Shown in pieces: positions 13,781-33,900 of a stretch of DNA of 64,000 nt. The stretch covers positions 6,552,476 through 6,616,475 of the forward strand of contig CAJINV010000002.1 of assembly GCA_905178155.1 (NCBI GenBank), read 5' to 3'. Made by a program: the position numbers and the translations under genes. The notes beneath the pieces are model-generated. The model was not told the origin of the DNA, ran no database searches, and saw only the letters and a list, made by a program, of their open reading frames with translations. How positions within the stretch are numbered: position 1 is the stretch's first letter; each line of letters opens with the position of its first letter. This DNA comes from Amoebophrya sp. A120. Taxonomy: Eukaryota > Protista > Dinoflagellata.

Positions 13781-14047
13781 TTGATTTTTCGAACACTTTT
13801 ATCACTTACTGTCTTAGATAATATCTCTTGCCATGACAAACGAATTAACCGCATTTATCTTTGTAGATGCCTTACATGTGGATTTAGTTATGTTGGTAAG
13901 TCATCTGATTTTACATCAAAAAACTCAAAATACCGTCGGCCAGATGCTCACACTCGTCATTGTTTCCACTATGATGATGCATCTCCCTTTTATTATCATT
14001 ATCGACAGTATGAGCGCCATGTTATTTCCTTTCAAACAATCTGTTAT
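13781..14047 (+). pseudogene. N-terminal half of PLE GIY-YIG endonuclease (CCHH type)
   Basis: SCHDKRINRIYLCRCLTCGFSYVGKS...RRPDAH...FYYHYRQYERH fits the PLE EN pattern C-x-N-x-IY-x3-C-x2-C-x3-YVG...R-x3-H...YxH...H. It is cut at 14047 by the transposon TIR. Confidence 0.85.
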
Positions 14048-14537
14048 GAGGTTCGATTCCCAAGTCAAGTAAATTTAGTAAATTGAAATTATTTTTTTGA
14101 AAGTGCGAAAAGGGAAACGGGGTGCGGCAGCGGTGCGAAGTCTTTCGGTCTGGTAAAGATTTGGGATACGGAAGCCGCCCCGGATTAGTCGAGCTGCGCA
14201 GCTTACTATGATCGAGGTCGTCGTCGTAAATAGTTTCGCCAATAGTATTCCCTCGAGAGAGTCGTTGCAAATTCGAAATCGCGAACAACTTGTGACTGGT
14301 ACCAGAAGCGGATAAATGAGGGTCGGCGGAACTCGGCAGCAAAGGGATTTTTTGAAAAATGCTCATGCTCGGACTCGTTCTGCAACTCCCCGCGTTGCAA
14401 TCATGATGTGAATGCAAAATGAATGCAGTAGTTTTTTTTTTCTGATATCTGTGTTGCAAATGCCACCCACTACTAGAATTGCCTTCGGTCAGTTTTGCTT
14501 TCATAAGCGTCGCGGTCGTCGCCCTTCTCCTTCCAGC

Positions 14538-17500
14538 ATGGATGGCGAACGATTCAAGACCGCCATCTACGAGCCGGCAAAGGGCTATGCTATGGGGGCG
14601 CTTATGTTCGCGGCCTCCTTGCCTTTTGCTGCGTTTTCCACGTCCGCCTCGCTGCTCCTCGGATTTGACGTGTCGAAATCTGCTCTCCTCCGCCTCCGGG
14701 AGAGGTCGGTGGAATACATCAAGCGGCACCAGAAGGAGCGGCTCCGGGCTGCCGCAAGTTCCGACGACATCACGCCGGTGGTAATACGACTGGGCCACGA
14801 TGGCACGCCGCTTGGCTTAACCGTATCAAAAGCTACGGGAACCGGCATTACGAGGGGCCGGCACAACCACAACGGCGAAGATATGGCGATGGTCACAAAT
14901 ACCGCCCACATGTGTGGGCGCAGCGCATTTCTGATCATTTTGGTATGCTATGCGATTATCATCACAGAAATGCACTGCGCTCGGGCCTTGGGCGGGGTAT
15001 TTGATTGTCCCTCCATAAGAGTACACGTCTGTACGGCCACTGCCTGCGTCGGAGCGGGCACAGCTTGGGCCAAGATTCGAATTCCGGTGGACCTGGTGCT
15101 CCTCGCGAAGAAGAAGGCAGGGGACATCTGGCCGCGGCTGCAGGCGGTCTTGGAGGAGGTCGAGCGACTGGCGTCAAACGTGGGGGGCCGCCGACCAGTA
15201 GTGGTGCTCAACACACAAGACTCGGGGGGCGCAGGTCGGAAGCTGAAGAAGATCTTGCGGCGTTGGGCACGTTTGAAGGACGAGCGGAGATCACGACGCA
15301 CCGCGGCCATGACCCTCTACTGCGCGCACCATTTTATCCAATTGGGATTTCTAGATGAGGCCAAACGAGCCCTCGGTGGGAATAGCAGCGCGAAAGACTG
15401 GGCCCACAAGCTCTACGTGTTTACGCGCAAACTCGTGTATCATAGGTGTGATCTGCTCGAGGAATTGGAGGAATGGGTGGGAAAGATGTTGATCAAGCCC
15501 ACTACCCAAGCAGCAGCGCTGATGCAGCATCCGGGTGGCGGGCCCGCGGGCTCCGTTGAGGTGCTGGACGAAACAGGAGCACTTTTTCGACTTCTCGGCC
15601 GCGGCGATAGTGACCGAAGCAAACAGGCCGCAGACGGTGTCGGCTGGAAGTCGTCAGCGGTCAGGTACGACAACTTCAACTCGAAACTCATTGCCAACTC
15701 CAAGGAAGAAGCCGTGGAAACCCTGAAGCAGCTGCTAGCGCGAATTCAGGTCGGGAGCGAGAGCCGTTGGCTGACCTTGGGTCGTTCTTGTGTGGCGATC
15801 CTCCTCTTGTCGGCGCTTGGGGGCCGTTGTCTCGTCGCGAGGAAGAGCGACGGATTTCGGGAGTCGGTTCGGAAGCAGTGGGGAGAGATGGTTGACGAGC
15901 GGATGCTGACGTATGCTTCTGAAATCCAAGCGGCAGTAAGACGCCTCAGCGCGAAGAGTGTGGCCTGCGTCAGGGCATTGGCTCTCACGCAGACTAGTGC
16001 TTTGCGGTGTCGTTTGCCGCTTTGATTTCTCATTTCATATTGAAGTAGCGGTGATCGCGCGGCCGTGCGATGTGGTCATGGAGGAGACGCTTCGGCGGGA
16101 TACACTTTTACCGGGCGAGACGCTCAGGGCCAGGCTGTATGAGTTGCAGCAATTGGCCTGGACGGAGGTGCTGGACATTTTACACATCCTGGGGCCATTG
16201 TCTGATCGGTTGGATGTATCTGCTCTGGCTGGTTCCGTCGTTCGTGCCGCAATGCGTGTGAGCCAACGGTTACTGCGGATAGACGCGGACGGGATTCTAC
16301 TTCCCCTCCTTGACTTGGTGGACGAGACGCAGCATCACGCCACGACTCCAGCTTTCCGGGCGCTCGAGATCGGGGAAGATTGGGAAGGGATTCAGGGGCT
16401 GTCGGACGTCCAGCTTGTCCAAGTTGCCAAGGCTGTAGCCGCGGTTTTGACCATCGGGACACGCCACGAAGAATCCCAACATGCTATCTCAGCCCGGAAA
16501 GTCGGCCTGAATACGCATCGAAGGACGATAGAAGGTCTGTCGCAAGAAGTCCTAATCCCCCAGTTTTCGGCCGCCTTGGTTTCGGAATACACGCTGTCGG
16601 CGTTGAAGCAGTTGAAGAAGACCAAGCAGCCCCGGCCCCAGAACGCCAGCACGCGCTCACTTTTCATCGGGAAGGAGGTGAGGGAGGCAACTTGGCGCAC
16701 AATTGTGAATAATCCGGAGGTATCAAATGCGAAAACGTCTGGGTCTGGAAGAGTGCAGGAGTTTGTCATGCAGATTTTGCATGACCCTGAGGTCTGTGAT
16801 GCGTGTTGTAGCATGAGAGATTCTGCGAGGGCTTTCTGATGCTCATATCGCATGAGAACAGCCCTCTCCGCGTAGCAAAAATTGCACCTCTGTTGCTGTT
16901 CATGCAATACAAATCTTTTCTAGAATCCAACGCCAGCATCACAAGTTGCAACCTTCTAGACCCAGACATTTTTGCAATGCATAGAGGGCGGTTGACAAAT
17001 CCTTTGGGAAGTCCCGGCAGGTCCAGGCGAAGGAAACTTTCACGGCCGCGGCGGAAAAATGGGCGAGAATGTCCGAAGCAGATAAGGCGAAGTACGAGCC
17101 GCTCCGCATATGAATTTCAAAACAGTCACTGCCCCATGCAAGATTGTCATGCTGATTTGCATCTGGAATTGCATCCTGAATTTAGAAGCAGCACTGCCAC
17201 AGGCGAGAACTTGTGATGGTTTTGAGATTCATACGCAAAGCGACAAAAGACGGGCGGTGCCCGTTCGAGTGGGATTGCCGCTAGTAACGTGGCGAGCAGG
17301 GCAAGCGAAACTTCCGGCAGCGTGGTCCTGCCGCGGCCCGGTCAGATCCGCATTGGCGCCGACGGCAAGGCGAAGTGGGAAGCCGGTGGAGCAGGTTCAT
17401 CCGCTGGAAATACCAAACCACAAGCACACAAGACAGCGCAGCAGCACGTCGCGCCACCTCTTTCTGCTGAACGACCTGCGGGTGAGTCTTTGGAAGCTAA

Positions 17501-19055
17501 GCTTGGCCGACCAGATCTTCCCATTCCGCTCGAGAAATTGCAGGGCTACTGGACGGAAAGCCAGGAAGAAATTTCTCTTGCGCGGACTTCTTCGTGCGCA
17601 GCACCCCTCTCCTGGAACGGGACTTCAGTGCAGGCGGCATATGATCGCTCTGCTTTTGCCGCTGAAGAAGGGCCGTCCAAGATCGTGCGGATGATATTAC
17701 ATGCGGAAGACGGGCGCGATTCCGGGAACATTGGGGCGATCGTCTTCGGGAAAGATCCGGAGGAAGAGGGCGTTGCACTAAAGAGCAACCAGAGTGGCCG
17801 TCTTGAACAGCCACGCAGCCAGGTCTTGGTGAGCAAGATCTTCACTCTGGCGCCCTGTGAGGGCCATTGCAGGTCCATTGTCTTTCAGGAGTTGGAGCAC
17901 CGTCCGTCGCACAACAAACAGTATGAATTTCACGCCGCCCTTCCCGCCGCCCCAAGCACAACCGGCAGTAGGTTTGAAGAGGTTTTTGCCAATTTCGACG
18001 ATGGGCAGGACGTCTGGTACGCCCCCCTGCGATTCGATCTCGTCAGCAGCACCTTCGTGTTTGACTGGTTGGAGGGGCGGTCCTTGTTCGACATGCTCAA
18101 CGACTTCGCATGCAGTGATGAGGAGGATGGCGGGGATGACGAATCTGGTAGCTCCAGCTCGGAGGAAGAGCAGTCGAGCGAGGAAGACGAGGAAATAGCC
18201 GCTTTGCTCCGCGCAAAAGCGGCGCGGAATAAGGAGGTAGAGCAATTTTACGCCGATCCGACAATAGTCAACAAAACAGCGCCGGTGGGGTACAGCACTT
18301 CTTCCAGGAGAAAGGGCGGCGCCGCGGGCAAGTCCACTCCCGCTGCCGCCGCGTCGGCTTCGGCCAATGCCCCGGGAGGTGGGGCGCCACAGCAGTCAAC
18401 GGTGGGGCAGCGCAAGTACAAGGGCGACGCCGGGTACGAGGATGACGCCGAAAACTTGCACGCGCAGCTGCTCGCTGCGCGGGAGCAGCTCGACGAGATC
18501 CCGGCCGCCGCAACCGACCGCCACGGGTATTCCACCCGCCTAGGCGGCGGACTTTGGCTCCGCGCAAATACGCGGGTAGGGGCATCCGGGCACAAGGCCT
18601 GGATGCCAGATGGCGGAATATGCTACGACCGGGTCATCACATTCGGGCCTCCGGAGCTTCATCGTCGTTTCGGCTTACCGCTCAGCAAAACAATCGACCT
18701 GCACAAGTTCGGGGGAGTAACAGTCGCGAAGCACCTAGGGGCGGTATGGGCGGAGGCCTGTCAGTTTGTTGTCCGTGAGCTGCAGAAGAACGTCGTGCCG
18801 GTCGAGTACGAAAATTTCGAAGAGGTGCGAAAACGGGTGGAGGAAGCAATTCTTATTTCGCGGGAATATCTCCGCGTCGTGACAGATGAGCCCGATGCGC
18901 AGGAACTGCAGGAGGCGGCAGGCCGGGAGCAGCCCCTCAGCAGCATCTCTGTGCAGCAGCGCGCGGAAGCTGCAGTGACGAGTGATTTAGTGTTATCAAT
19001 CGCAAAGCACATGCATGCCAAAGCAAAAGAACAGAAGAAGTTAGTAGGGTCGTAG
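14538..19055 (+). CDS. Multi-exon DDE-type transposase with CxxH and RW motifs, an HMG-box-like segment and an acidic C-terminal extension
   Basis: VIRLGHDGTP (D at 14799), VVLNTQDSGG (D at 15219), LYCAHHFIQLG (CxxH at 15321), SESRWLTLG (15762), GTRHEESQHA (candidate E near 16468). Exon 16985-17107 reads AAAEKWARMSEADKAKYE. ORFs 14412-16025, 15958-16839 and 17289-19055 join after removing inserts; exact exon borders are uncertain. Confidence 0.72.
14918..14980. repeat. Short IR-bounded insert (putative non-canonical intron) in the transposase gene
   Basis: gcgcagcgcatttctg (14918-14933) versus cagaaatgcactgcgc (14965-14980), 15/16 inverted match around an AT-rich core. Confidence 0.65.
16721..16983. 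mobile_element. TAT...ATA introner (263 bp) in the transposase gene
   Basis: 31-bp imperfect TIR tatcaaatgcgaaaacgtctgggtctggaag; flanking repeat gagg. Same TIR family as 22972 and 53281. Confidence 0.85.
17109..17233. mobile_element. TAT...ATA introner (125 bp) in the transposase gene
   Basis: tatgaatttcaaaac / gttttgagattcata inverted repeat; flanking repeat cgca. Confidence 0.8.
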
Positions 19056-19219
19056 TTTATTAGCTGAAGCAGATAACTACCCTCCTCGGCATGGTTGGGC
19101 CCTTCCGTGTCCTGCCAGATTTCTTTCAGTAAGAAGCGCCGTCGCGGCTGCTTGCGCGGTGGCAGTCTAAATCGCCTCTGCCTGGCCCCGCGCCAATGTT
19201 CACTCCTCGGAGCTGTCGA

Positions 19220-19700
19220 TGAGAGACGCAAAAAAAAATCTGTCGCGCGCCACGAAAAAAAAATAGACCGCGTCGGCCCGGGCCCGCGCCGATTTTTTTT
19301 CTCCTCCCGCGCGGAAAAAAAAAAAACGCGCAGAAAAAAAAAGCGCCTCGCACCCAGAAAAACCGGCGGCAGCCGGTTTTTTTTGGTGCGCAGACCAAAA
19401 AGTAAATTGAATAAATTGAGATTTTAAGGTCCTGTTTCCGGGGCAAAGGAAATCCTTCCCAAAACGCCTGTGCCCTAAAATCGGTCCCTTTTTTTTCAAT
19501 TTATTCAATTTACTTTTTCACCGGGCAGTTTTTTTTCGGCCAGTTTTTTTTTTCCGGTGGACCCGCCGATTTTTTTTTCCTGCGTGGATTTTTTTCTGCG
19601 GTGAAATTTCGGTTCTTTTTTTCTGGGCGCTACGGGCGCCAGCCTCAGAAATTGGCTCTCCCGGGACCCCGGCCAAAATTTTGCTTCGCGTCCGCGGCTC
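19220..19700. other. Intergenic A-tract/T-tract mirror region centred on a perfect 23-bp inverted repeat that resembles the transposon TIR
   Basis: aaaaagtaaattgaataaattga at 19397-19419 and its exact reverse complement at 19496-19518. Mostly A-runs to the left and T-runs to the right, separated by GC-rich spacers. Confidence 0.75.
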
Positions 19701-19942
19701 GCTAGCCCGTGAAAAATAATCGCGTGTGAGAGCCCGAGCGAATTTGTCGTCGTAGTGCAAAGTTGGTAGTAGCGCTCGAAGTCGTATGTCGATATTGAGT
19801 AGAACAATTTGCAAACTGGCACAAGCACTGCGTCTCAAACAGGCAGAAGTAGAAATAAACACATCTAGACGCAAAAAGCACCCTAGTAGCTCACCCCTTA
19901 AGACCCACCTACCTGCCTCTGCCCAGTAGAAAACGTGGCAAA

Positions 19943-22900
19943 ATGGACAGAGGATCGATCGCCAAGGCGGTCGTCAACAAGCAGACAAAGAAGGCCAAGG
20001 CCAAGCAGGACCGCAAGGAGCGGGCCCCGATGACCAACAAAGCCATCGAGGAGGCCCTGCGCGGCAAGGGGCATGCGGTGAACCAGCACAACATCGCGAT
20101 CTACCGCCGGTTGAAGGGCAACTTGCAAAAGGTCGGCAAGCATGGACACACGATCATGAACCTGTTCAACAAGGACAAAGACACAATACGCGAATGCAAA
20201 AAGCTTCCGCGTGTTCCACTCAGTACGCATGACAGATATGCATGACAGACGCATGACAGATAGCGACATTTGGACACCAGAGGGCACACACGGAAGTTTT
20301 TAGCCCCATAGCCCGGAAACTTGATCTGGGACGACAACAAGGTGGACGGGTACTGGGCCACCCGGACAAAAAAAATCAAGACCCTGCCGTGGAAAACGAT
20401 GGGGAAAAGGCTGACCAAGTTGTACAACGACCTGGCGCCCAAGGAGAAGCTGAACCGCATGCCCTTCGTGTTTTTGGCGATGCCGCCCGGTGGTGAGCAG
20501 CTGGCATCCGAATCCCCGAGCCCCCTGAGTGGGATGCAGGATGAAGAGGAGCTGTCCGACGCCTCCGTCGCGGGAGGTGGTGATGATGACGAGGGTGAGG
20601 TGGAGAAGAATGACGAGGTCAGCAGCGACGGGCTTTCCGAGGAGTTGGATTTCAACGAAGACGGTGACGCTTTCGATGAGAATAATTCGAGTGTGGTCGT
20701 CGAGCAGGGCCTGCTCGAGGGGGCCGGTGAATACGAGGGTGATATCAATGCTGGTCAGGTTAGTCGACAACTGCTTGCATGAAGTTCCCGCATGAAAATG
20801 CCGCTTTTCTTCATTGCCCTGACCAGCATCGATTTTGCGTTGCATATTCAGCAGGACGTGGTCGAAGGAGGAGATGCTGGCGGGGGCGATGTCGACATGA
20901 TGGATGTGGGGTATAGTGGGTTGCTCTCGTGATTCTATATGGAAGTGTTCAGATTTGTCATGCGAGTTTTCGGATTTGTAATGCGTGTCGGCACCTTGTC
21001 GCAAATGAGTCTCCGTCTCAATTTCATTTTCAGATTTGACGACGGTGGAAATTCTACGGACGCTTCCAGTGGGTTGCAGCAGTTGCTTGGTGGGGCCAAG
21101 GTGATGCCGTCTTCTTCTTCCTCCACCCGGATCAAAAACAACAATCTGGATTTGAGCGGGAACTCCGCGAGCAGCAAGCAGAATTCCTCCTCAACCTCTC
21201 TCGGCGGGGCCCTCGGAGCTCTTACGACCTACAGCAACTCTTCCAGCACTAACATCAATTCTACCACCACGGAAGTAGAGTGCCGGCATGTTGTTCCGAA
21301 GGTGGTCACGGCCGAATTGTGGGAAGACGATGAGTTGCAGCAGATGAAGAACGCGGTGCACGCGATGTGCAAAAGCATTGGCAGCGTCGGAGTGGAGGAC
21401 GTCGCGCCGCTGTTCAAGTTCGCGGAGCACTATGAGAGCGGCATGATGATCCTGGAGAAGTTCTTTCGCAAAGGGTGGGGATTAGAAATCTTCGCCGAGC
21501 AGACCTACCCCCTGCGGGCGTTCAAGGAGCTGCAGTGGTTGGCGTGGTGTGATTACAACAAGCCGGGGTTTCGGCCGCCCGTCCTGGCCAACGATTTTCC
21601 CGCTCCGTCCTGGCTCTCCGAGCATGACGCCGGGATGCAGCGGGCGATGGATGAGGCAGAGGTGCTGGTGTACACCGAAGTCGTGCTGGAATCTATTCGG
21701 AGCAATAAAATCGAAGACGCCAAGCAACAAATGAGCATGATCATGATGGAGATGGGAAGTTCCTACCAGTTGGCCCTGCAGGAAGTGGCTTCGACCCGCG
21801 CCTGGATGGAATTTCTTCCGGTCCAGGTCATGCACATTGCGATCGTGGAATCCTTGAAGAAGTACGACCTGACCATCGTGGGGGAAAACCACTACCCCTC
21901 CTACCTGATGAACGACCGGACGTGGGTGAACATCGGCGTGGAGACGACTGCCAGCGATTTGATCGACGCCGCGCACGAAATTTCCAACATGCCGAAGGCC
22001 CAGGTTCCGTTCGAGGAGTTTCACCGGAAGGTCTCCGACATGCTGTCCAAGCTGGTGGAAACTGCTATGGAGCGGTTAGAGTCGCAGGTGGATGCCGTCC
22101 TGAATGCGAAGACCTATATGGACCTGCACTGGAAGGCTGAGTATATATGATTTTTTAGTATTATTGTTGAAGGTGTTTATCTGTGCCAGAGTCTGCAACG
22201 GCCCGTGTGAAGCATGACGCTTGCCCTATTATGATCAAGGAAGGAGAAGGCTTAAGAACTTACAGCGCCAGTTGCCCGCTTGTATGTGCGAGCAGGCCTA
22301 TTGAGGGGCGGGGGAAGTCTCAAAATGGCAAGCGCTCCAGCCTTGCGCGCGCTTTTCCCTATCCCCACGCTGTTGCTCTTGGGTTCGGCATATCTGGGGC
22401 TTTCGGAGACTGGCCAAGAAGTTCATCTCCGTTCTCAGTCAACACAAATGGGCAGGGGCCGAACATTGCGCATTTTGTCCCGCTCTTGCCGCGAGGCCAG
22501 TGCAAGTTCGAGACCTTTGCCTAGCCTGCAGCTGCCTGGAGCGCGGGGAATTTTTCTCATATCCTAAATCCATAAACGAAAACACCAGGTCTACCACCGT
22601 CCGCAAAAACCTCGAGATGGCCGTAAATGTTTTCGAGAAGGGTAGTGTGAAGCATGACCGCGCGGCCCGCGCGATCTACTACTGCAAGTTCCAGGAGGGC
22701 GCCCTGAGCGAGGAAGCCACGCAGGCGGCTGCGGACTCCCAGCTGTTGGCGACGGACTTCGCGTACAAAGCGGCGATGGACCGGTACTTGGGGTACACCA
22801 GGATTACAGGGGAGGGAAAAAACGAACTGGATAAGATGCTGAACTACTCGGAATCCGACTGGAAGGCCGAACAGGACACGGACATTCTGACGCTGATGAT

Positions 22901-26245: not shown

Positions 26246-29200
26246 TCATAATAGTAATGCGGTAAAACTAATTACAGAAAACAAAATCATTGTGCCCGGA
26301 AACACTTCTGCTCCAGACATGTTAGACGACGACACTCCGGAAAAAATCAATGATATTTTGGTAGCTCAAAATATGAAGTCTGACTCGCTCGACCAAGGAG
26401 CTGCTGCTTCTGCTCTTCAATCCGCGCACCTGCGAGCTTTCAACCTAGACTCAACTGATGCCGACACAATCATCCCGCAGTCTTCTCAACACAGTGAGCC
26501 GACGACGATCAAAACGCCCACTCTGCAAGAAAAACCTCCACGCACACACGCGCGACCTGCAGATGCTTTTCACGAGCGTTCTGATATGCCGCTGGTGCCG
26601 GAATTCAAAATGCTATTTTGTCTGGGACGGAAAAACACGCGAGTAGTAGTCCAGCATGTAGCGAATATGTGGACTGAACAAGAACGAAAAGCGACGCGGA
26701 AAAAAGCAGAGCTCGAGGATACGAGGCACAAGATGAAGTTGCTGGCTCTTTTGTTTGCAAAGCGGATTCATGGTGCCTCCGAATCCCTCAAATCGTTTGC
26801 AGCTGGTAGAGAAAAAGTCTCCAGCAGCAAAATCGTCCCGCCTCCAATTCCGGGCTTAGCGCGGCGATTGAAGCATCAGATAGCCTGCGCCTACGACCAC
26901 TTCCAAGATTTCACTGCAGACCAGAAGCCGGTGGCTACGGGGAAAGTTCCATCTTCCGCCGTGCCTGTTTTTAGCAACAATTCGTCCACAGCCGACGAAT
27001 ACACTCCTGCATACCAAGAAACGCACCCGAAAAAGCTTAAGTGCCACCTCTCCAAACAGTCATGCCTTGCGACGAAAACGACTAGTGGAGCCAGAGCTTC
27101 TGTTTCAAACATCCAAGCGGAAAGTCCACCGATCCCAGGACGTTTGCAGCCAGAAGGTGGAGTAGAAACCAAGCCACTAATCCGAAAACGTCCCCAGATT
27201 GAAACATTGCTTCCGCCGCTGCCTGAAGATGATGAACACGATGTCGGAATATCGAGGTTTATACACGTTGACGAAGAGGTGCAGCACGACCAAAATCGAC
27301 ACGAAAATGCTGCTGCTTCTCAATCTTCAATGATTCTGCCAGCGGTAGATGTTCAGCGCGCTCCTGTAAGTGAAGATGAAGTCAGTGCTTCCTCCTGTGT
27401 CCTAGAAGCTTCTACGACGCCAGCATCTACTTCCCTATTCGTCGACTCAAGCATAAGCCAGCGCATTCTGCCCATCGTTGATCCAGATACTGCTTCTGAC
27501 TTCTCCGCCTCACAGGAATTTTTTGAAAACGAGCAAGACAAACCACTTCCCAGTTGCCGGGGGGAAGCTAAAGCTAGTCGCTCAGCAGAAGAATTGATAT
27601 TCGGTGAGCAGTTGGCTGCTGTGCGGGCTCAGAAGAACAAAAAAGCAGTAGCTTCTGTACACCAAATTACACACCGTCGCACATCTACAGCAGCAATAAA
27701 GTGTGGAAATTTCAAGAGCCGTCTCTACGTCCAGCAGAGCATCGCTTTTTGGGAAGCTTGGCTTACGGAAACCGACATCGAAACAGTAATAAAATCAAAA
27801 CCCAATTGCTGGCGGCTAATAATCCAGACGGTTGTGTTGTTTTTTCCCAAAACCGAACACGGGATAGCCACCCTACAGCAACAACTTCTGAGATCACAAA
27901 AAATCTCTTCTCACTTGAAGGAAGCGATATTCGACGCCATGCACTTCGGAGCTGCAGACAAACCTAAGCCACCACGTCCACCCGGCTCCTTCAAGTCTCC
28001 GATCGTTTTGCTGTGGCATAGCCCGACTGTGGAAAAGGCGAATATAGCCGGAATTTTGAAAGCAGCCAACCTGCACGAGAAGTGCATGATCTCATGGGCC
28101 TATAATACACCCGAAAGCGTCGGACTTTTCAACGCGCGGCATTTGGTACAGAAGAAATTTCACAAGTGTGATCTTTTGTGCAGTTGTGCCTACTACCGTG
28201 GAATTTTGAACGAAAAGTATTTCGTTCGCGGCCACCTCTGCATTGCCCCGGACGAGTTCGGGCAGTTGTTGTGCAAGGACGACGCGCGCGTCTGGTGTCG
28301 GGACATACGTATGCTCGACGATGCATTTCGCTCCGCCATGCCGTACTCCACCGAGACCCTCTTCGAACGTGTGCAGCAAGGATTTGACGCTGTTGCACTT
28401 GCACAAATCAGAAACGAAGTAGGCGAAAGGATCGAGACTTTCCAGAAAACAAATCCAGCGGCGTACGCAAAGTTAGCAGCTTCCGAGGATCTCGAGGAGA
28501 TGAGGGATTTGATAACTAGAGCGCAGTCTCGCGGCCTGGTGGATTGCCGCGCGGACAAGATCAGCAATCCGTTCAGGATCTGCAGGGCACTACTATCAGT
28601 AGTAGTTCGTGACCTTTGCGGAGTAGTGACTTTTACAAGTCTAAATGCTGCAAACAAAGCAACAAAAGCAAAACAAAAAGAACAAACCGAAGACCCTGCT
28701 GTTGCTTTTCAGAAATCAGTTTCGGCGAAGCAGTCTCCATCAGCCGTGTCCATCGAATCCCTACCCGGTCACGTAGAAACTCCATCCCAGCCGTTCCTCC
28801 CGAACCAGATGAGAATTAGCCAAGATGGGGCCATGGCTTTGAACCTGACCTACGTGAACCACAAGGCCCGGCCCACTCTGAAATTCCGGGAAAGTGAAGC
28901 TGTTTCTGTTGCAAGCTCTCTTTTGGTTGCTGATGCCTACCGGAAACTAAGCGACGAAGTAACCGCTAACAACTTCTTCTGCTGCCCCCTCTTCTCAAGC
29001 ATGAACGTGTACGAGGACAAAGTTCTTTACGTTGCGAATTCAAGCTTCTTCGTAGTGCAACTTTGTGGGTGGATAATGAGAGACGTCTATCTCCCGCAGC
29101 ATCACAGCGTCGATAGATCTTCCATAAATATTCGCAACTTGGACCACCTCGTGGCCAACGACAACATCGCTCGGAATCCAATCGAGTTGCTGAAGCCGTT

Positions 29201-31283
29201 GTTGCAGAAAAAGTTGCGTCTGGGGTACAAGTACGACAAAGAAGCAAGTACGTACTTTCGTCGGAGAGGAAAACAGCGCGGAGCCAAAAAACGCAAAAAG
29301 GAAAAACCTCACAACTACAAATCAGTGATGCAGTCGTACAAGCGGGGTCCGCAGTCGCGACCTAATGCAAGATGGTGTAAAAAACGGAGCAACATCATCA
29401 GCAAGCTTCCTTCCGAATCTCCGCCAGAAATAAAAAACTCTGCTGCTACCGGTGCCAAGTTCTCCATCCGACCGCTGATGCAGGTTATCGGAGCTTCAGC
29501 AAAATGGAGCTTATCATCTGCTGCAGCTAGCCTCCGAGCATCGAAAGACGAAAATGCAGGGTGGAGCCAGCATGATTTGGATGCCGCCATTGCTAATTCG
29601 CTAGCAGATCAAGCAACTTTGGACTTGCAGACTCAGCGTCTACGCCAGCGCGTGCAAGAAGCGGGCTTCAAGATACTACCTGTTGAAGAAGATGGCAACT
29701 GCTGTCTCAGAGCGATATCGCAGTCGTTGCACAATTCCCAAGTGCATCACGAGTACTACCGCATGCGTGGCATCCAGCACCTCATCGACAATCGCAACCA
29801 TTATCAAAATTTCCTCCAAGAAGATCCAGCGTTTCCAACTTCCGACGAAACCTGGCGCAACTACATCCAGTGCATGGCGGTTGCCGGCTGCTGGGCTGAT
29901 CATGTTATCCTGAGTGCAGTTGCAGCTAGCGGAAATATCATCTTCAAGCTGATAACAACATACGAGGACGATGCTCCGATTGTTGTTAAGGGGCCACAAG
30001 CCAGCGCTGCTTCCTCATCACCTCGAATGGTAACCCTAGCGTTCCGCGCGGAGGTGCATTATGATGCTGGAGAGCCCCTCCCCGCAAATACCGCGATGCC
30101 AGTTCATGCGGATGCCGTGGGAGAGGACAACGTTGAAGGCAGAGCAGCGGTGGACATCGACATACGCGAAAATGCAGAAGTAGTGAAACCTGGAGCCGCC
30201 CAAGCAATTTTCGAAGACGCAATGAAAGCAGCAAATAAAGCACTAAGAGCAGAGTACGCGAGAAGCCTTGCTCGAAAACATCAAAAGCAATTACGCGGCG
30301 GTGGTTTCGGATCGTCAGTGCTCGCTTCACAAAAAAACAGGAAAAGCGAGGTCCTGTCCCCGGCTTCTAGCTCTGCGCGCTCGTCTTCATCATCTCCGTG
30401 TTCTACGAAAAGCGATAAGTTTCCTTTTGATTTAGTCCCATGCAAGTCGAAAGCTTCCACGTCGCAAACAGGGATACGAGCTTCGACGTCGGCCTCTCCA
30501 TCTTCAGCCACCAAGCTCCCATCACATCAGATTTTGTGTGCAGGCGCTACGACGACATCCTCATCATCGTCTGCTGTTCCGGCGGGATTAAAAAAGTCCA
30601 GTCATGTATCACAAAAAGCGCAGGCGTCCTCATCTGCCACGTCAGCATCCGCTGCTGTGTCTCATCCATCGAAAAAAGCTTCTACAGCAAAGAGCAAATC
30701 GCCAGCCACGTCCAACAGTAAGTCCGCCTTTGGAAAGCAAATCGGATTTGTTTTTTCAGCAGACTCGCGGGCGAAGTCAAAAGAAAGTGGAAGGGCGGCA
30801 GCAGTCCAGAACAATAGTGGAAAGCATGCCCATCCATACACAGCTGCGATAAAAACAAGCAACACCTCGAAGACAACGTCCGAGCCTACAAGTAAAGCAG
30901 CCTTTTCGTCATCCGTGATGAGTTGTGTTTCAAATGCAATCAGGAGCAAGGCCTCGATGGTGAATATTCCGCATACAGCATTACTCTCTTCGTCTACAAG
31001 CTTGCTGAACCACAATGCTGCGCCTGTGCCTCCCCCTCGACAACCACGGGTGGAAACGCAAAGCAAATTTGCATCGGTGCGAGAAGATGCTCTACCTGTC
31101 CATGAAGAAGACGCTCCGCAGAGACACCCTCCTCCACCACCTAAATTAATCCCGCGGCCGCACCAAAAACCCGAAGAAACAGTTGTTCCCGTGCGGAAAA
31201 TTCCTGCAGCGCAAGCCGATATTCTTCCCCCACCGAAAAAGCGTGGAGGTAAGTGGGAACGCGACCGGATAAAAAAAGTATAG
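26109..31283 (+). CDS. PLE polyprotein segment 3: CxC linker, RT N-terminal ADK motif, UIM-like motif, OTU cysteine protease, Ser-rich tail
   Basis: Frame is open from 26109. CMISWAYNTPESVGLFN...LCSCAYY...RGHLCIAPD; CRADKISNPFRICR...RDLCG; HDLDAAIANSLAD (29571); PVEEDGNCCLRAIS...CWADHVILSAVA...LAFRAEVHYDA. Confidence 0.85.
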   Translation, partial: NENSGEEPIGEATFYFPKTFIKRASVRPAATITTKPAAKASTGNINHNSNAVKLITENKIIVPGNTSAPDMLDDDTPEKINDILVAQNMKSDSLDQGAAASALQSAHLRAFNLDSTDADTIIPQSSQHSEPTTIKTPTLQEKPPRTHARPADAFHERSDMPLVPEFKMLFCLGRKNTRVVVQHVANMWTEQERKATRKKAELEDTRHKMKLLALLFAKRIHGASESLKSFAAGREKVSSSKIVPPPIPGLARRLKHQIACAYDHFQDFTADQKPVATGKVPSSAVPVFSNNSSTADEYTPAYQETHPKKLKCHLSKQSCLATKTTSGARASVSNIQAESPPIPGRLQPEGGVETKPLIRKRPQIETLLPPLPEDDEHDVGISRFIHVDEEVQHDQNRHENAAASQSSMILPAVDVQRAPVSEDEVSASSCVLEASTTPASTSLFVDSSISQRILPIVDPDTASDFSASQEFFENEQDKPLPSCRGEAKASRSAEELIFGEQLAAVRAQKNKKAVASVHQITHRRTSTAAIKCGNFKSRLYVQQSIAFWEAWLTETDIETVIKSKPNCWRLIIQTVVLFFPKTEHGIATLQQQLLRSQKISSHLKEAIFDAMHFGAADKPKPPRPPGSFKSPIVLLWHSPTVEKANIAGILKAANLHEKCMISWAYNTPESVGLFNARHLVQKKFHKCDLLCSCAYYRGILNEKYFVRGHLCIAPDEFGQLLCKDDARVWCRDIRMLDDAFRSAMPYSTETLFERVQQGFDAVALAQIRNEVGERIETFQKTNPAAYAKLAASEDLEEMRDLITRAQSRGLVDCRADKISNPFRICRALLSVVVRDLCGVVTFTSLNAANKATKAKQKEQTEDPAVAFQKSVSAKQSPSAVSIESLPGHVETPSQPFLPNQMRISQDGAMALNLTYVNHKARPTLKFRESEAVSVASSLLVADAYRKLSDEVTANNFFCCPLFSSMNVYEDKVLYVANSSFFVVQLCGWIMRDVYLPQHHSVDRSSINIRNLDHLVANDNIARNPIELLKPLLQKKLRLGYKYDKEASTYFRRRGKQRGAKKRKKEKPHNYKSVMQSYKRGPQSRPNARWCKKRSNIISKLPSESPPEIKNSAATGAKFSIRPLMQVIGASAKWSLSSAAASLRASKDENAGWSQHDLDAAIANSLADQATLDLQTQRLRQRVQEAGFKILPVEEDGNCCLRAISQSLHNSQVHHEYYRMRGIQHLIDNRNHYQNFLQEDPAFPTSDETWRNYIQCMAVAGCWADHVILSAVAASGNIIFKLITTYEDDAPIVVKGPQASAASSSPRMVTLAFRAEVHYDAGEPLPANTAMPVHADAVGEDNVEGRAAVDIDIRENAEVVKPGAAQAIFEDAMKAANKALRAEYARSLARKHQKQLRGGGFGSSVLASQKNRKSEVLSPASSSARSSSSSPCSTKSDKFPFDLVPCKSKASTSQTGIRASTSASPSSATKLPSHQILCAGATTTSSSSSAVPAGLKKSSHVSQKAQASSSATSASAAVSHPSKKASTAKSKSPATSNSKSAFGKQIGFVFSADSRAKSKESGRAAAVQNNSGKHAHPYTAAIKTSNTSKTTSEPTSKAAFSSSVMSCVSNAIRSKASMVNIPHTALLSSSTSLLNHNAAPVPPPRQPRVETQSKFASVREDALPVHEEDAPQRHPPPPPKLIPRPHQKPEETVVPVRKIPAAQADILPPPKKRGGKWERDRIKKV

Positions 31284-33087
31284 AAAATTTCAAGCCGACA
31301 TGAAGAATTTACGCACGCGAAAACACTATCTCCGCCTCTTCATGAAGCAGAGACGTATTGGAGCAATAGCGGAGAGGGTGGAACCAGAGTCACTTCCAAC
31401 CCGAAAGCCGCGCACTCAGCAAGACAACTTCGCTTCAAATTGCAATACTGTGACTACTTTCGCGGAGGACAACAGATGGTGGCGGGATAATAAGTGGTGG
31501 CTGAATTTTTACTGGAGTTCTACACGTTGGGGTGAACGCGAAAACGAGGAGCCACGCAATCCATGGGTAAATTCTTACAGCATGTATGATGGTGCTGATG
31601 TCGACTGTTTAACTAACGACCCGCGACTACGAGCAGGCCGCGATAACTTCCTGAAGATTATGTGCAACTTCTCCGAGGACGAGTTGCAGGATTTGCAAAA
31701 TTACAGCATCGAAACTGTAGACCACGCTCATGCTACGGCACAGCGGAAACAGGCAGAATTTGATACGGGTGTCCCGGACTTTTTCAACGTTCCCCTGTCG
31801 TACGATCTAAAAGAAGGAACTGATTTTGTGATGAACGTCGACCCCAACAATTTAAAACCGGGCATGTTGATAGGGGATGGTGCTTACGAGGTTTGCAATA
31901 TGGATTTAAATGCTGCTAAAAATACACTGAGGCAGCGCATCGCTCCTGCCCTCCATACAGGAATTGCAAGTGCGTCAAGACTCTCGTATTTATATCCTAG
32001 TGCTAAAATGCACAAAGCCCCCATTATTGCATTCCGCCCAATTTGTTCTGCAACGAATAAAACCCCAATAAGTGTTTTAAGTGATACATTAAAGCATGTG
32101 TTAGATTATGTTTTGCTGCAAGTACCACAGGGGTTCCGAGTGCGGGATAGTCTGGGAGCAAAAAAGAAGATAATGCAAGGAGAATATAGGTCATTTTACA
32201 AAGGTGATTCTAGTTCAGTGTGTATGTGTTTAAAACGCGGCACATTGATACGAATTCTAAATGAGCAAATCCATTTTGCATTGAAACACCACCAGCATGA
32301 TTTCTTTCTTTTTTATAAATCTGGCATGCGCGTAGCTAAAGCTCTACCATCTAAGCGCGATGGTATCCTTGCTATTTTGCGCTACAGTGACTTATTCCAA
32401 GTTATGAAATCATGGTTATGCTGTAATTATGTAAACGTAAGTGGTTTGACATTATTACAGCGTATAGGCATCCCTATGGGATTGTCGAGCGCAAACTCGA
32501 TTATAGACTGTGTACTTTGTAATTTAGAGTCACGCTTTTTAAGTGGCCTATCATCAACAGAACGACAGCGATACGCTGGCACCTGTCGTTTTGTTGATGA
32601 TGTCATTAGTGAAAGCACTAATTTTGTTTCAGCTTGGCGCTCCATATACAAGGACACGGGACTGGAATTGGAAACGGAAACGCTCGGCAGTTCTGCGGTA
32701 TTTTTGGACCTGGAGCTGACGATCGTCAAAGGGACAGCTTTTTTCAAAACTTTTTCCAAAAGCAGTTTGTTCAAGTTTGCAGTGAGTAGGTATGTAACAG
32801 GGCGATCCTGCATATCTAAAAGTACTATTTTTTCAAGTTTTTGTGGCAGTTTCCTTCGTTTTTATTCTAACAATAATTTAGCTTTTTTCTTCCTTAGAGA
32901 AGTAGCAGAGCTTATTTTGCGTATGAAGAACTTACTAAATTTTAACATTTTTCGAAAAACAATAGATATACTCCTGTCCCGCCACAACGAAAACAAGTGG
33001 CTCGATTCCGTTTCCTTCCGCCGTATCCTCTTATCTTTCTGCATGCAAGTATTGGACTATAAATTCCAGTATTTGACTACAGAATAA
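31273..33087 (+). CDS. PLE polyprotein segment 4: reverse transcriptase core and thumb
   Basis: LSYLYPSAKMHKAP..FRPICS, KGDSSS (degenerate motif A), QRIGIPMG (32458), RFVDDV (32587), AVFLDLEL, FKFAVSRY...SCISKS. No C-terminal endonuclease. Confidence 0.92.
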   Translation, partial: KKYRKFQADMKNLRTRKHYLRLFMKQRRIGAIAERVEPESLPTRKPRTQQDNFASNCNTVTTFAEDNRWWRDNKWWLNFYWSSTRWGERENEEPRNPWVNSYSMYDGADVDCLTNDPRLRAGRDNFLKIMCNFSEDELQDLQNYSIETVDHAHATAQRKQAEFDTGVPDFFNVPLSYDLKEGTDFVMNVDPNNLKPGMLIGDGAYEVCNMDLNAAKNTLRQRIAPALHTGIASASRLSYLYPSAKMHKAPIIAFRPICSATNKTPISVLSDTLKHVLDYVLLQVPQGFRVRDSLGAKKKIMQGEYRSFYKGDSSSVCMCLKRGTLIRILNEQIHFALKHHQHDFFLFYKSGMRVAKALPSKRDGILAILRYSDLFQVMKSWLCCNYVNVSGLTLLQRIGIPMGLSSANSIIDCVLCNLESRFLSGLSSTERQRYAGTCRFVDDVISESTNFVSAWRSIYKDTGLELETETLGSSAVFLDLELTIVKGTAFFKTFSKSSLFKFAVSRYVTGRSCISKSTIFSSFCGSFLRFYSNNNLAFFFLREVAELILRMKNLLNFNIFRKTIDILLSRHNENKWLDSVSFRRILLSFCMQVLDYKFQYLTTE

Positions 33088-33619
33088 CTATCCGTGGTTT
33101 GCATCCATTCCTCGAACCCCAGCTGTTTGTATTGCCCTTCTGTTTTCTATGCGTTCTTTGGTATGCCTCCTGTTAGGGCCTTTGCATGCCAGCAATGGGG
33201 GTCCAAATTCAAAAAGACTATAAATGTCTTTTCGAATCTGGACACTTGGAATGTTTGTATTGCATACTCCTTTAACCTGGGTGAGGTCTTACAAAGTCTA
33301 CAACTTTATGTCATCATCCAATGGCTTTTTTGAATATAAAATTCTGAAGGCCTCCGTCTACATCTTTAGCTTGGTTGCTTGTTCTGTTTGTCTTTCAATT
33401 CTGTCATGCACCCCGTCCTTTCTGCAATAAAATGCCAATCATCGGTCTATGTCGGTTTTGATTCTGTCATTCTTGTGCGCGTGCCATTTCTGGTTTTTTC
33501 CTCTCGGTTCTTTCTTTCCCTGCTCCGCATTCATGAGAGAGTTAGAGTTTTCGAATTTGACATCGTTTTGCTATCTAGACCTCCTATGTATCTGCATCGC
33601 CTCGTCATCGTTTTCTCGT

Positions 33620-33900
33620 AGCCGCATTACAAATATATTTTTTATCTCCATCTCATCGATCACGACGTCAATCTCGGTTTTTTGTTATTTTTAGCATTAC
33701 AAATGATCTATAGAGCTATATTATCGATCTCGACGCTCTCATCGGTTTTTTGTTCGTTCTAGCATTACAAATGATCAGTAGCTCTCATTTTTCGATCTCG
33801 ACGTTCTTTGCTCGCTATTTCTGCACAAATATAGGTTTTGCTAGATCTACCATATCGATCATGTTCGAAATCGATCTCGTTCTCGTACCTTGGTCGCTAT
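33620..33900 (+). repeat. Degenerate ~68-70-bp tandem repeat (3-4 copies) downstream of the RT
   Basis: gcattacaaat...tcgatc(a/t)cgacg...tcggttttttgtt starting at 33624, 33694 and 33762. Confidence 0.75.

What the first reader, a model, noticed from the sequence alone, without database searches (positions are those of the whole stretch)
13781..33087. Giant Naiad-type Penelope-like retroelement carrying its own UIM-like + OTU deubiquitinase module inside the RT
Seen: four separate ORF pieces read collinearly as GIY-YIG (CCHH type), Cys/Ser/Thr repeats, CxC linker, ADK motif, UIM-like HDLDAAIANSLAD, OTU (EDGNC...WADH...VHYD; D, C and H all intact), Ser-rich spacer and RT (PMG, FVDD, FLDL). Known: N-terminal EN, CxC and C-terminal RT define the Naiad/Chlamys PLE clade. 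CCHH-bearing Naiads are described from invertebrates, while Chlamys (algae, spike mosses, slime moulds) lack CCHH. OTU domains are known cargo in some other TE groups, but I know of none in a PLE. Inference: this is a ~2,800-aa PLE polyprotein in an alveolate-like host, with a ~3.2-kb insertion (28620-31870) where homologues have only a short loop. The OTU may process the polyprotein or strip ubiquitin to evade host control.
Basis: partly seen in the sequence, partly recalled or inferred. Interest (0 to 1): 0.92.

Follow-up and report, generated by a model that had tools for sequence, protein, structure and literature searches.

The report
Dead Penelope-like retroelement carrying OTU deubiquitinase
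A broken, single full-length copy of a Penelope-like jumping gene in a parasitic dinoflagellate carries a genuine ubiquitin-removing (OTU) enzyme domain between its nuclease and its reverse transcriptase. That combination has not been described for this class, but it is seen here only once.

Summary
Four collinear reading-frame pieces (13781-14047, 24887-26245, 26292-31283, 31300-33087) encode these parts in order:
- a GIY-YIG endonuclease with the CCHH pattern, cut in two by a 10.8-kb inverted-repeat transposon;
- Cys/Ser/Thr tandem repeats;
- a CxC block;
- a DK motif;
- a UIM-like helix and an OTU domain;
- a Ser-rich spacer;
- a reverse transcriptase (RT).

The OTU domain is confirmed at three levels: Pfam above its cut-off, human OTUD3/5/1 by sequence at about 1e-8, and the predicted fold.

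The RT's best database relatives are 850-1300-aa proteins. Every one in which an endonuclease can be seen has it at the N terminus. The element therefore belongs to the N-terminal-endonuclease (Naiad/Chlamys) group of Penelope-like elements (PLEs). Placement as Naiad versus Chlamys is unresolved.

- The OTU-specific segment (29528-31325) has no second copy in the genome.
- The only other copy spanning that junction, a deeply diverged fragment, lacks it.
- A second, intact Amoebophrya family has about 745 aa of different sequence at the same site.
- This copy is dead. An independent contig confirms both frameshifts, and no RNA reads were found.

Deubiquitinase cargo looks recurrent in this class. 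One clade of Naiad-type PLEs from metagenomes carries a C-terminal USP domain, and a LINE-like ORF in this genome carries a UIM-like motif plus OTU.

Verdict: a new variant of a known kind, of moderate interest.

The parts
13781..14047 (+). N-terminal half of the GIY-YIG endonuclease. GIY is at about 13853, CxxC at 13868-13879 and YVG at 13889-13897, followed by R..H and two His (CCHH pattern).
   Evidence: Pfam GIY-YIG E 0.042. Naiad endonuclease profile 20.7 bits. Residues align.
14048..24884 (.). 10.8-kb transposon with terminal inverted repeats that interrupts the endonuclease. It is not part of the retroelement.
   Evidence: Inverted repeat 14057-14100 / 24831-24874, 86% complementary. 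Sequence read. GC is 0.55 here against 0.46-0.50 in the element from 24885 onward.
24887..25010 (+). C-terminal half of the GIY-YIG endonuclease (catalytic E at 24956, P.GGN with N at 25004).
   Evidence: The profile score rises from 20.7 to 33.0 bits when this piece is joined to 13781-14047 with an X.
25470..26007 (+). Tandem repeats (81 and 123 nt) that encode the Cys/Ser/Thr-rich repeats.
   Evidence: Tandem Repeats Finder scores 245-351. Translation.
26109..26245 (+). Zone of the first frameshift. Both frames are open here. An LGG motif lies at 26117-26125.
   Evidence: ORF coordinates. An independent contig is identical over this stretch. Motif position.
27990..28650 (+). Conserved linker with the CxC motif (CSC at 28179) and the DK motif (28548, Cys 7 residues after the position that is A in the Naiad DKA motif).
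   Evidence: blastp to family B, E 2.9e-7. Spacing of 126 aa equals that of the Naiad profile. The DK alignment is weak.
28651..29527 (+). First part of the giant DK-to-RT1 insert. It includes a basic, NLS-like block, and 29160-29527 is shared with contig C158.
   Evidence: tblastn to C158: 47% identity over 126 aa, E 1e-34. DNA breakpoint at 29527.
29528..31325 (+). Segment unique to this copy, containing in order: UIM-like helix 29571-29609; OTU core about 29640-30068 (D 29691, C 29700, H 30057); LRGG 30291-30302; Ser-rich spacer about 30310-31200; RGG 31242-31250.
   Evidence: No other copy in the genome.
31270..31283 (+). Second frameshift, at an A7 run. The RT frame is +1 relative to the OTU frame.
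   Evidence: Sequence. An independent contig shows no indel here.
31300..33087 (+). Reverse-transcriptase ORF. A Trp-rich block before the RT (31357-31560) is shared with C158. The RT core is 31867-32991: RT1 KMHK at 32005, motif B at 32467-32481, motif C (VDD) at 32596-32601, motif E (FLDL) at 32701-32712.
   Evidence: Naiad profile 141 bits, E 1.3e-44. Profile search gave 1768 hits. Alignments A1 and A2.
33088..34251 (+). 3' untranslated region. It has a 68-nt tandem repeat at 33655-33804 and a terminal hairpin at 34221-34243 (stem arms contain CATG). Similarity to other copies ends at about 34251.
   Evidence: blastn to the 5'-truncated copies. Sequences read. Tandem repeat.

Best explanation
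What it is. This is the only full-length copy of a low-copy Penelope-like retroelement family ('family A') of the parasite's genome, and it is dead. The family belongs to the PLE group with an N-terminal GIY-YIG endonuclease (Naiad/Chlamys).

The insert. Amoebophrya PLEs share a hugely expanded, variable linker between the conserved DK motif and RT motif 1. In this lineage a ready-made UIM-like + OTU deubiquitinase module, with a Ser-rich tail, was incorporated in frame into that linker. It is of the cellular OTUD1/3/5 type. Its source was most likely a host or other transposon-borne OTU gene of the same genome.

Likely action (inferred). While the element was active, the OTU acted as a deubiquitinase. 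It removed ubiquitin from the element's own protein or ribonucleoprotein particle (RNP), or from host factors at the integration site, and so protected the element from ubiquitin-dependent degradation or restriction. The same role has been proposed for Josephin, OTU and Ulp1 domains of other transposons.

Shown: the domain identities, their order, the insert position, that the segment is a singleton, and that the copy is broken.

Inferred: that the module travelled with an active element, and what it did.
For: Class of the element:
- The RT profile finds 1768 proteins. Every top hit in which an endonuclease is visible has it at the N terminus.
- The consensus of the hits shows CxC, DKA followed by a Cys 8 residues on, PKxHK, RYIDD and FLDL. 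These match the diagnostics in PMC8557442.
- The endonuclease is split by the transposon and aligns across the break.

Insert position:
- The insert is at the same profile position in family A and family B.

OTU module:
- The OTU is confirmed by Pfam, by sequence against solved structures and by fold.
- The UIM-like + OTU pairing is shared by a LINE-like ORF and by other OTU loci in the genome.
- The closest paralogue is a split locus on contig C22, 48% identical.

Signs that the module belonged to a working ORF:
- The segment is in frame with the upstream PLE sequence.
- It is stop-free through to the end of the 1663-codon ORF.
- RT copies diverged under purifying selection, with dN/dS 0.10 and 0.24, so the family was an evolving, active lineage.

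Other deubiquitinase cargo in this class:
- A USP clade among Naiad-type PLEs.
- A Josephin-like motif in Chlamys-1_cBra (PMC8557442).
Against: - There is only one copy of the OTU segment in the genome.
- The only other copy across the junction lacks it.
- All other family A copies are truncated downstream of it, so transposition of an OTU-bearing element is not demonstrated.
- The copy has a transposon in its endonuclease and two real frameshifts. One frameshift lies within the OTU-specific segment, close to its 3' edge.
- No RNA reads were found, although it was not shown that the organism is present in those runs.
- No homologue with this order of domains was found outside the genome.
Confidence: 0.55

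Rival explanations
1. One-off chimera. The UIM-OTU-Ser-rich segment entered this one genomic copy, or a dead-end lineage, by recombination, template switching or a secondary insertion. It never served the retroelement, and the intact catalytic residues merely reflect a recent origin from a working gene.
For: - The segment is a singleton, and C158 lacks it.
- The frameshift lies about 45 nt from the segment's 3' edge.
- The net extra length relative to C158 is 1 modulo 3. That is what a segment whose length is not a multiple of three would give.
- This locus did receive another insertion, the 10.8-kb transposon.
Against: - No target duplication or poly(A) tail was seen at the edges.
- The 5' junction is in frame and on the same strand, which has a prior of about 1 in 6.
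- The frame difference is equally explained by a one-base change in the A7 run.
- C158 is so diverged that synonymous changes are saturated, so it says little about this subfamily.
- Other PLEs and a LINE-like ORF do carry deubiquitinases as regular cargo.
Confidence: 0.28
2. The OTU is a cis-acting processing protease. It cuts the roughly 2800-aa polyprotein after ubiquitin-like LGG, LRGG and RGG motifs. This frees the endonuclease-linker-OTU part, the Ser-rich spacer and the RT, much as papain-like or OTU proteases of some RNA viruses do.
For: - Four [LR]GG motifs occur in 2799 aa. Three lie between domains, at 26117, 30291 (an exact LRGG about 80 aa after the catalytic His) and 31242.
- In shuffles, LRGG appears anywhere with P = 0.019, and four or more [LR]GG with P = 0.001.
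- OTU-less family B has none.
- Ordinary Naiads have 6 such motifs in 39,942 aa.
Against: - The motif choice was post hoc.
- Most cellular OTUD enzymes cut isopeptide bonds, not peptide bonds (my own knowledge).
- USP-bearing Naiads have no such motif between the RT and the USP domain.
- The LINE-like ORF with an OTU has only two [LR]GG motifs, at positions 651 and 1146, far downstream of its N-terminal OTU.
- There is only a single sequence, so conservation of the sites cannot be tested.
Confidence: 0.12
3. The long OTU-containing ORF is a host gene domesticated from a retroelement. It is not transposon cargo.
For: It is single-copy, has a long open frame (1663 codons) and has intact OTU catalytic residues.
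Against: - The ORF has PLE sequence on both sides.
- It is frameshifted against its RT, and its endonuclease is broken by a transposon.
- No gene model or homologue was found.
- No RNA reads were found in two raw RNA runs. One possible RNA run gave only two tiny low-depth contigs.
Confidence: 0.05

Closest known systems
Naiad / Chlamys Penelope-like elements (Craig et al. 2021, PMC8557442)
   Same: - N-terminal GIY-YIG endonuclease, CxC block, DK(A/x) motif and a C-terminal PLE-type RT.
- A long spacing between RT motifs A and B, of IFD length (IFD = insertion in fingers domain).
- No hammerhead ribozyme.
- Tandem repeats and accessory domains that lengthen the element.
- The CCHH pattern in the endonuclease, as in Naiads.
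   Different: - The host is an alveolate parasite. Naiads are known from invertebrates; Chlamys are known from green algae, spike moss and slime mould.
- There is an insert of about 1068 aa between the DK motif and RT motif 1.
- It carries an OTU deubiquitinase.
- The third residue of the DK motif is I, and the Cys is 7 rather than 8 residues on.
- No pseudo-LTR or microsatellite target was seen.
Chlamys-1_cBra of Chara braunii (Josephin-like motif) and Dualen non-LTR elements (Josephin domain)
   Same: Retroelements that carry a cysteine-protease domain of a deubiquitinase class. The proposed role is to interfere with protein degradation (PMC8557442).
   Different: - The class is Josephin, not OTU.
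- In Chlamys-1_cBra the motif sits in a C-terminal extension and the homology is weak. Here a clear OTU lies before the RT core.
OTU domains of Ginger1 DNA transposons and Helitrons/Helentrons (PMC2836005, PMC6431247), and a LINE ORF2p with an N-terminal OTU in Symbiodinium (PMC13405545)
   Same: The Pfam OTU domain occurs as transposon cargo. A LINE-like ORF in this same genome has the same UIM-like + OTU module.
   Different: These are different transposon classes with different transposition enzymes. None of them is a Penelope-like element.
Human OTUD3, OTUD5 (DUBA) and OTUD1
   Same: These are the best matches by sequence and by fold. The Cys loop (DGNC) and His loop (HYD) are aligned.
   Different: Identity is about 20%. 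The domain here is embedded in a retroelement polyprotein. Activity and linkage preference are unknown.

Membership tests
N-terminal-endonuclease PLEs (Naiad/Chlamys) | A PLE-type RT whose nearest relatives are N-terminal-endonuclease PLEs | tested here: met
   The profile search gave 1768 hits. Every top-150 hit in which an endonuclease is visible has it at the N terminus, and none has a C-terminal one. The RT scores 141 bits against a 42-sequence Naiad profile.
N-terminal-endonuclease PLEs (Naiad/Chlamys) | GIY-YIG endonuclease upstream of the RT in the same element | tested here: met
   The two halves at 13781-14047 and 24887-25010 align as one domain at 33.0 bits. The order is endonuclease, linker, RT on the + strand.
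N-terminal-endonuclease PLEs (Naiad/Chlamys) | CxC (zf-CDGSH-like) motif between the endonuclease and the RT | tested here: inconclusive
   CSC at 28179 lies in a block that aligns with family B (E 2.9e-7) and at the expected distance from the DK motif. It has no significant score against the Naiad profile.
N-terminal-endonuclease PLEs (Naiad/Chlamys) | DKG motif changed to DKA (Naiad) or DK+x (Chlamys) | tested here: inconclusive
   Family B has DKA with a Cys 8 residues on, and its DK block is significant (E 2e-6 to 5e-7). The window element has DKI with a Cys 7 residues on, and its alignment scores -3.8 bits.
N-terminal-endonuclease PLEs (Naiad/Chlamys) | IFD-length region between RT motifs A and B | tested here: met
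   About 86 aa lie between the motif A Asp and the motif B Gln, against about 80 in the Naiad profile. This is judged by spacing only.
N-terminal-endonuclease PLEs (Naiad/Chlamys) | No canonical hammerhead ribozyme | tested here: met
   The Rfam scan of 12000-36000 at E up to 1 found nothing.
N-terminal-endonuclease PLEs (Naiad/Chlamys) | Pseudo-LTRs or partial tandem structure, and a microsatellite target | tested here: inconclusive
   No similarity was found between 9000-14047 and 24885-35000. The 5' end of the element is not defined, and no other copy holds the 5' region.
Naiad in the strict sense | CCHH pattern inside the GIY-YIG core, plus the CX2-5CxxC linker | tested here: inconclusive
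   The CxxC and both His align in the window copy. The upstream linker finger is not readable here, because the frame opens only 16 codons before the first aligned Cys. Family B aligns to profile positions 33-179, which include it.
Naiad in the strict sense | RT nested within the metazoan Naiad clade | tested here: not met
   The Amoebophrya RTs lie on one side of a branch (SH-aLRT 93) against 51 database N-terminal-endonuclease PLEs. The window RT has a very long branch (3.4). There were no Chlamys, canonical PLE or TERT references, so the root and the sister group are unknown.
OTU deubiquitinases (Pfam PF02338, OTUD subgroup) | OTU fold with the catalytic Asp/Cys (DGNC) and His (HY) loops | tested here: met
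   (H and Y invariant in all five rows; DGNC conserved in the four rows that cover it).
OTU deubiquitinases (Pfam PF02338, OTUD subgroup) | Hydrolysis of ubiquitin conjugates | not testable with these tools
   This needs a biochemical assay.
Ubiquitin-interacting motif (UIM) | A match to a UIM profile above its threshold | tested here: inconclusive
   UIM_2 scores 14 bits against a cut-off of 21, E 0.058. The pattern is kept in three paralogues and lies in a helix.

The most novel reading that the evidence does not exclude
Penelope-like elements with an N-terminal endonuclease have repeatedly recruited deubiquitinases of different classes: OTU here, USP in a clade from metagenomes, and Josephin-like in Chara. 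In this element the OTU would double as a self-processing protease. It would cut at its own LRGG, RGG and LGG sites to separate the endonuclease module from the RT. That would be a virus-like polyprotein strategy in a non-LTR-type retroelement.
Probability: 0.12. Interest if true: 0.8.

Novelty: new variant of a known kind. Interest (0 to 1): 0.5.

Why it matters
Reach of the group. If the OTU truly travelled with the element, N-terminal-endonuclease PLEs extend to alveolates, and with a CCHH-type endonuclease. That bears on whether the CCHH pattern is ancestral to this clade. Craig et al. left that question open.

Ubiquitin as a shared pressure point. OTU would join the deubiquitinases recruited by PLEs. 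Together with the USP-bearing Naiad clade seen here, this suggests the ubiquitin system is a common pressure point for this retroelement class, as already proposed for Ginger, Helitron and Dualen elements.

A test. The LRGG site gives a cheap, direct test of self-processing.

Caveat. The case rests on one dead copy, so its weight is limited until a second copy is found.

Tried and rejected
Searches that gave nothing useful:
- Word-indexed protein searches with the RT ORF, with the block before the OTU plus the OTU, and with the family B RT returned only the window's own gene model or nothing.
- phmmer of the RT against solved structures found nothing.
- The AlphaFold model of the RT from a 5-sequence alignment was useless, with pLDDT 34.
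- The Telomerase_RBD family search of the own genome, intended to supply an outgroup, found nothing.
- The metagenome scan for the pre-OTU + OTU protein found no relative.
- Pfam on the CxC/DK block, the pre-OTU block and the Ser-rich spacer found nothing.
- Pfam on the ORFs around the C22 OTU locus found nothing, so whether it is a host gene or a transposon stays open.

The A25 locus and the source organisms of the USP-bearing PLEs could therefore not be inspected.
Loci were limited to 10 kb.
The part coordinates were derived by hand from earlier outputs instead.

Ideas considered and rejected:
- A -1 programmed ribosomal frameshift at the A7 run is rejected because the RT frame is +1, not -1.
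- A TA, TTA or 4-bp target duplication for the 10.8-kb transposon could not be settled from the flanks.

Handling of the broken frames:
- In one search the two endonuclease halves were joined with an X.
- In one search the four pieces were concatenated inside the script only to count motifs and to shuffle.
- No joined sequence was printed or saved.
Full report
**Where this is**

The window is G000:C2:6552476-6616475 of a 115.5-Mb, 401-contig genome. Earlier scan notes name it Amoebophrya A120. In agreement, the nearest outside RT relatives are annotated proteins of Amoebophrya sp. A25 and AT5.2.

**The observation**

The + strand holds four collinear open pieces:

| Piece | Coordinates | Length |
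|---|---|---|
| 1 | 13781-14086 | 101 aa |
| 2 | 24713-26245 | 510 aa |
| 3 | 26292-31283 | 1663 aa |
| 4 | 31300-33087 | 595 aa |

**Endonuclease**

Between pieces 1 and 2 lies a 10.8-kb element (14048-24884) with higher GC and 44-nt inverted ends.
- Pfam sees GIY-YIG in piece 1 only weakly (E 0.042).
- I built a profile from six database endonucleases. It scores 20.7 bits on piece 1 alone.
- It scores 33.0 bits when piece 1 (to 14047) is joined by an X to piece 2 from 24887.
- In that alignment GIY, CxxC, YVG, R..H, two His, E and the P.G.N Asn are all in register.

The endonuclease is therefore real. It has the CCHH pattern and was cut in two by a later transposon.

**Repeats and reverse transcriptase**

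Tandem repeats of 81 and 123 nt (25470-26007) encode the Cys/Ser/Thr repeats.

Pfam does not see the RT. I made a profile from the window RT, one other family A copy and three intact relatives in the genome (alignment A2).
- It found 1768 proteins at E up to 0.001 among 1.84 billion.
- The best hits outside Amoebophrya are 850-1280-aa proteins with Pfam GIY-YIG at the N terminus and the RT at the C terminus.
- In every top-150 protein in which an endonuclease can be seen, it lies within the first 350 residues. None has a C-terminal endonuclease.
- The consensus of the hits shows CxC, DKA with a Cys eight residues on, PKxHK, DFSTLYT, GIPMG, RYIDD and FLDL.

These are the diagnostics that Craig et al. 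give for Naiads: CxC, DKG changed to DKA, and the Cys eight residues after DKA (PMC8557442).

A profile of 42 full-length database proteins scores 141 bits on the window RT (E 1.3e-44, positions 530-916). No hammerhead ribozyme is present. Membership in the N-terminal-endonuclease PLE group is well supported.

**A second family, and where the insert sits**

Three loci form family B: C6:3819202-3824427, C20:592757-598345 and C18. They are 64-73% identical to each other and about 25% identical to the window in the RT. Two of them have intact ORFs of 1742 and 1863 aa.

Family B has these features:
- the endonuclease, with a match that covers the upstream linker region of the profile;
- a CxC block;
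- a significant DKA block (profile positions 486-526);
- then about 745 aa of unrelated sequence;
- then the RT resumes at profile position 533.

In the window element the CxC (28179) and DK (28548) motifs are weak on their own. They are collinear, though, and are 126 aa apart, as in the profile. The RT resumes at profile position 530, which is residue 190 of piece 4 (31867).

A giant insert at this exact site is a shared trait of Amoebophrya PLEs, not a peculiarity of this copy. Only its content differs.

**The OTU module**

- Pfam OTU passes its cut-off, at 25.5 bits on the whole ORF and 28.5 bits on the excised part.
- phmmer against solved structures finds human OTUD3 (1.7e-8), OTUD5 (3.5e-8) and OTUD1 (4.5e-6). 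DGNC aligns in the OTUD3 and OTUD5 alignments and HYD in the OTUD3 one.
- An AlphaFold model from a five-row alignment has mean pLDDT 73 and pTM 0.68.
- Foldseek returns OTUD5, OTUD3 (target-normalised TM-score 0.81, rmsd 3.0) and OTUD1 at 2.5e-8 to 1e-7, followed by viral and bacterial OTUs.
- The UIM-like peptide matches only Pfam UIM_2, below its threshold (14 against 21 bits).
- The same A...S pattern, with T for S in one row, precedes the OTU in three paralogous loci. It falls in a 31-residue helix of the model.

UIM-like + OTU is therefore a pre-existing module in this genome.

**Other OTU loci in the genome**

The genome holds few relatives of this OTU.
- The closest (48% identity) is a locus on contig C22 whose OTU is split into exon-like pieces. 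Its nature is open.
- Another relative sits at the N terminus of an intact 2273-aa ORF at C1:5003575-5010393. That ORF also has Pfam RVT_1 and, by eye, AP-endonuclease-like and RNase H-like stretches. I read it as a LINE-like element with an OTU.

A LINE ORF2p with an N-terminal OTU has been noted in Symbiodinium (PMC13405545). OTU is known cargo of Ginger1 and Helitron transposons (PMC2836005, PMC6431247). I found no paper that links OTU to a Penelope-like element. Craig et al. report only a weak Josephin-like motif in one Chara Chlamys element.

**Is the module the element's own?**

This is the weak point.
- All other family A copies are 5'-truncated at or after 31645, as expected of target-primed reverse transcription.
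- One other fragment reaches further up, the 3.5-kb contig C158.
  - In a single frame it matches the window's residues encoded by 29160-29537 (47% identity).
  - Then come ten Ser-rich codons.
  - Then it matches 31357-31560 (71% identity).
- DNA alignment sets the unique segment at 29528-31325.
- That segment has no other copy in the genome, by DNA or by protein.
- Nothing like it was found in the metagenome scan.

Several points argue against reading this as a plain refutation:
- C158 is so diverged that synonymous changes are saturated.
- The RT copies differ mostly by synonymous change, with dN/dS 0.10 over 458 codons and 0.24 over 124 codons. Family A was therefore a set of active, diverging subfamilies.
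- The segment is in frame with the upstream PLE sequence and is stop-free.
- No poly(A) tail or target duplication marks its edges.

Family B and the A25 protein lack an OTU, so parsimony favours a gain in the window's lineage. I put about 55% on cargo of a once-active subfamily and about 28% on a one-off chimera.

**State of the copy**

- The endonuclease is interrupted by the transposon.
- The frames of pieces 2/3 and 3/4 differ.
- The 3/4 shift is +1 and sits at an A7 run (31271-31277). One base fewer would join the frames.
- A Logan contig of a public run, 9660 nt at depth 42, is identical over 26000-31999 with no gaps. So the frameshifts are not errors of this assembly, although the run may come from the same DNA source.
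- Two raw RNA-seq runs gave no reads. It was not shown that the organism is in those runs.
- A third run, only guessed to be RNA, gave two tiny low-depth contigs.
- The 3' untranslated region runs to about 34251 and ends in a hairpin shared with other copies.
- The 5' end is undefined.

**Mechanism**

The best-supported reading is a trans-acting deubiquitinase that shields the element's protein or RNP, or alters ubiquitin signalling at integration sites. This is an inference from the domain family and from what has been proposed for other transposons.

A more novel reading is self-processing.
- The pieces hold four [LR]GG motifs. Three lie between domains: LGG at 26117, an exact LRGG at 30291 about 80 residues after the catalytic His, and RGG at 31242.
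- In shuffles, LRGG appears with P = 0.019 and four or more [LR]GG with P = 0.001.
- Family B has none.
- Ordinary Naiads have 6 in 39,942 aa.

The motif was chosen after looking, and USP-bearing Naiads show no such site before their USP domain. I give this reading about 12%.

**Seen on the way**

Five clusters among the top RT hits carry a full Pfam UCH (USP) domain after the RT. Some have up to twelve members, mostly 1270 aa long on contigs of about 5 kb. In the RT tree they fall in one starred clade (SH-aLRT 99). They come from metagenome assemblies of unknown organisms. Deubiquitinase cargo thus recurs in this PLE group with three different enzyme classes.

**Phylogeny**

A quick maximum-likelihood tree of 57 RTs puts the window RT, family B and two A25 proteins on one side of a branch (SH-aLRT 93), against 51 database N-terminal-endonuclease PLEs.
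- The window RT has a very long branch (3.4).
- No Chlamys, canonical PLE or telomerase sequences could be obtained, so the tree is unrooted.
- Naiad versus Chlamys placement is unresolved.
- By structure, the endonuclease is Naiad-like (CCHH), while the DK motif of the window copy is Chlamys-like.

**Verdict**

This is a new variant of a known kind: an alveolate N-terminal-endonuclease PLE with an OTU deubiquitinase in its expanded linker. It is known from one dead copy.

The scan had also noted this stretch and its transposon separately, and it had noted other PLEs and OTU-bearing transposons elsewhere in this genome. I used those notes as leads only.

Noticed in passing
Proteins P0020, P0034, P0095, P0035 and P0110, with cluster members P0157, P0170, P0176 and P0177: Naiad-type PLE proteins from metagenome assemblies carry a complete Pfam UCH/USP deubiquitinase after the RT (up to 109 bits). 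Where full length, they run N-terminal GIY-YIG, RT, USP. They form one clade in the RT tree (SH-aLRT 99). One is filed in NCBI under a Gammaproteobacteria bin. I found no paper describing this.
   Followed up: partly
G000:C1:5003575-5010393 (-), locus L032:2576-9394: An intact 2273-aa ORF has a UIM-like motif and an OTU domain at its N terminus (37.6 bits) and Pfam RVT_1 (24.7 bits, below its 29.6-bit cut-off). By eye it also has AP-endonuclease-like and RNase H-like stretches. I read it as a LINE-like retroelement with deubiquitinase cargo. A related OTU lies at C16:1274598-1276592.
   Followed up: partly
G000:C6:3819202-3824427 (-), C20:592757-598345 (+), C18:1359560-1365626 (+): Family B is a second PLE family with an N-terminal endonuclease. 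Its copies are 64-73% identical to each other, and two have intact ORFs of 1742 and 1863 aa. It has DKA followed by a Cys 8 residues on. About 745 aa of unknown, partly coiled-coil-looking sequence sit at the same site as the window's OTU insert.
   Followed up: partly
window 14048-24884: A 10.8-kb element with 44-nt terminal inverted repeats and GC 0.55 is inserted in the endonuclease. It holds several long ORFs (for example 17289-19055 and 14412-16025). Its target duplication could not be settled from the flanks.
   Followed up: no
window 34221-34243; also L024 about 5690-5660 (-) and L003 about 4055-4080: The copies end in a short hairpin whose arms contain CATG (CATGCAAA ... TTTGCATG). Similarity between copies stops a few bases after it. 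Earlier scan notes link PLE insertion in this genome to CATG-containing introner motifs. I did not test this here.
   Followed up: no
G000:C22 about 487736-488849 (L034:6736-7849): This is the closest paralogue of the window's OTU (48% identity). It is split into three exon-like pieces separated by about 250-300 nt. It may be a host OTU gene with introns or an old copy invaded by introners.
   Followed up: partly
window 26117-26125, 30291-30302, 31242-31250: Ubiquitin-tail-like LGG, LRGG and RGG motifs lie at the boundaries between domains of the polyprotein. They are enriched against shuffles (P = 0.001) and absent from OTU-less family B.
   Followed up: partly
window 33655-33804: A 68-nt tandem repeat (2.2 copies, 80% matches) lies in the 3' untranslated region.
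   Followed up: no
G000:C13:3227902-3228204 (L035:7903-8205): An isolated fragment is 45% identical to the linker stretch just upstream of the CxC motif (window 27852-28151), with no other PLE sequence around it.
   Followed up: no
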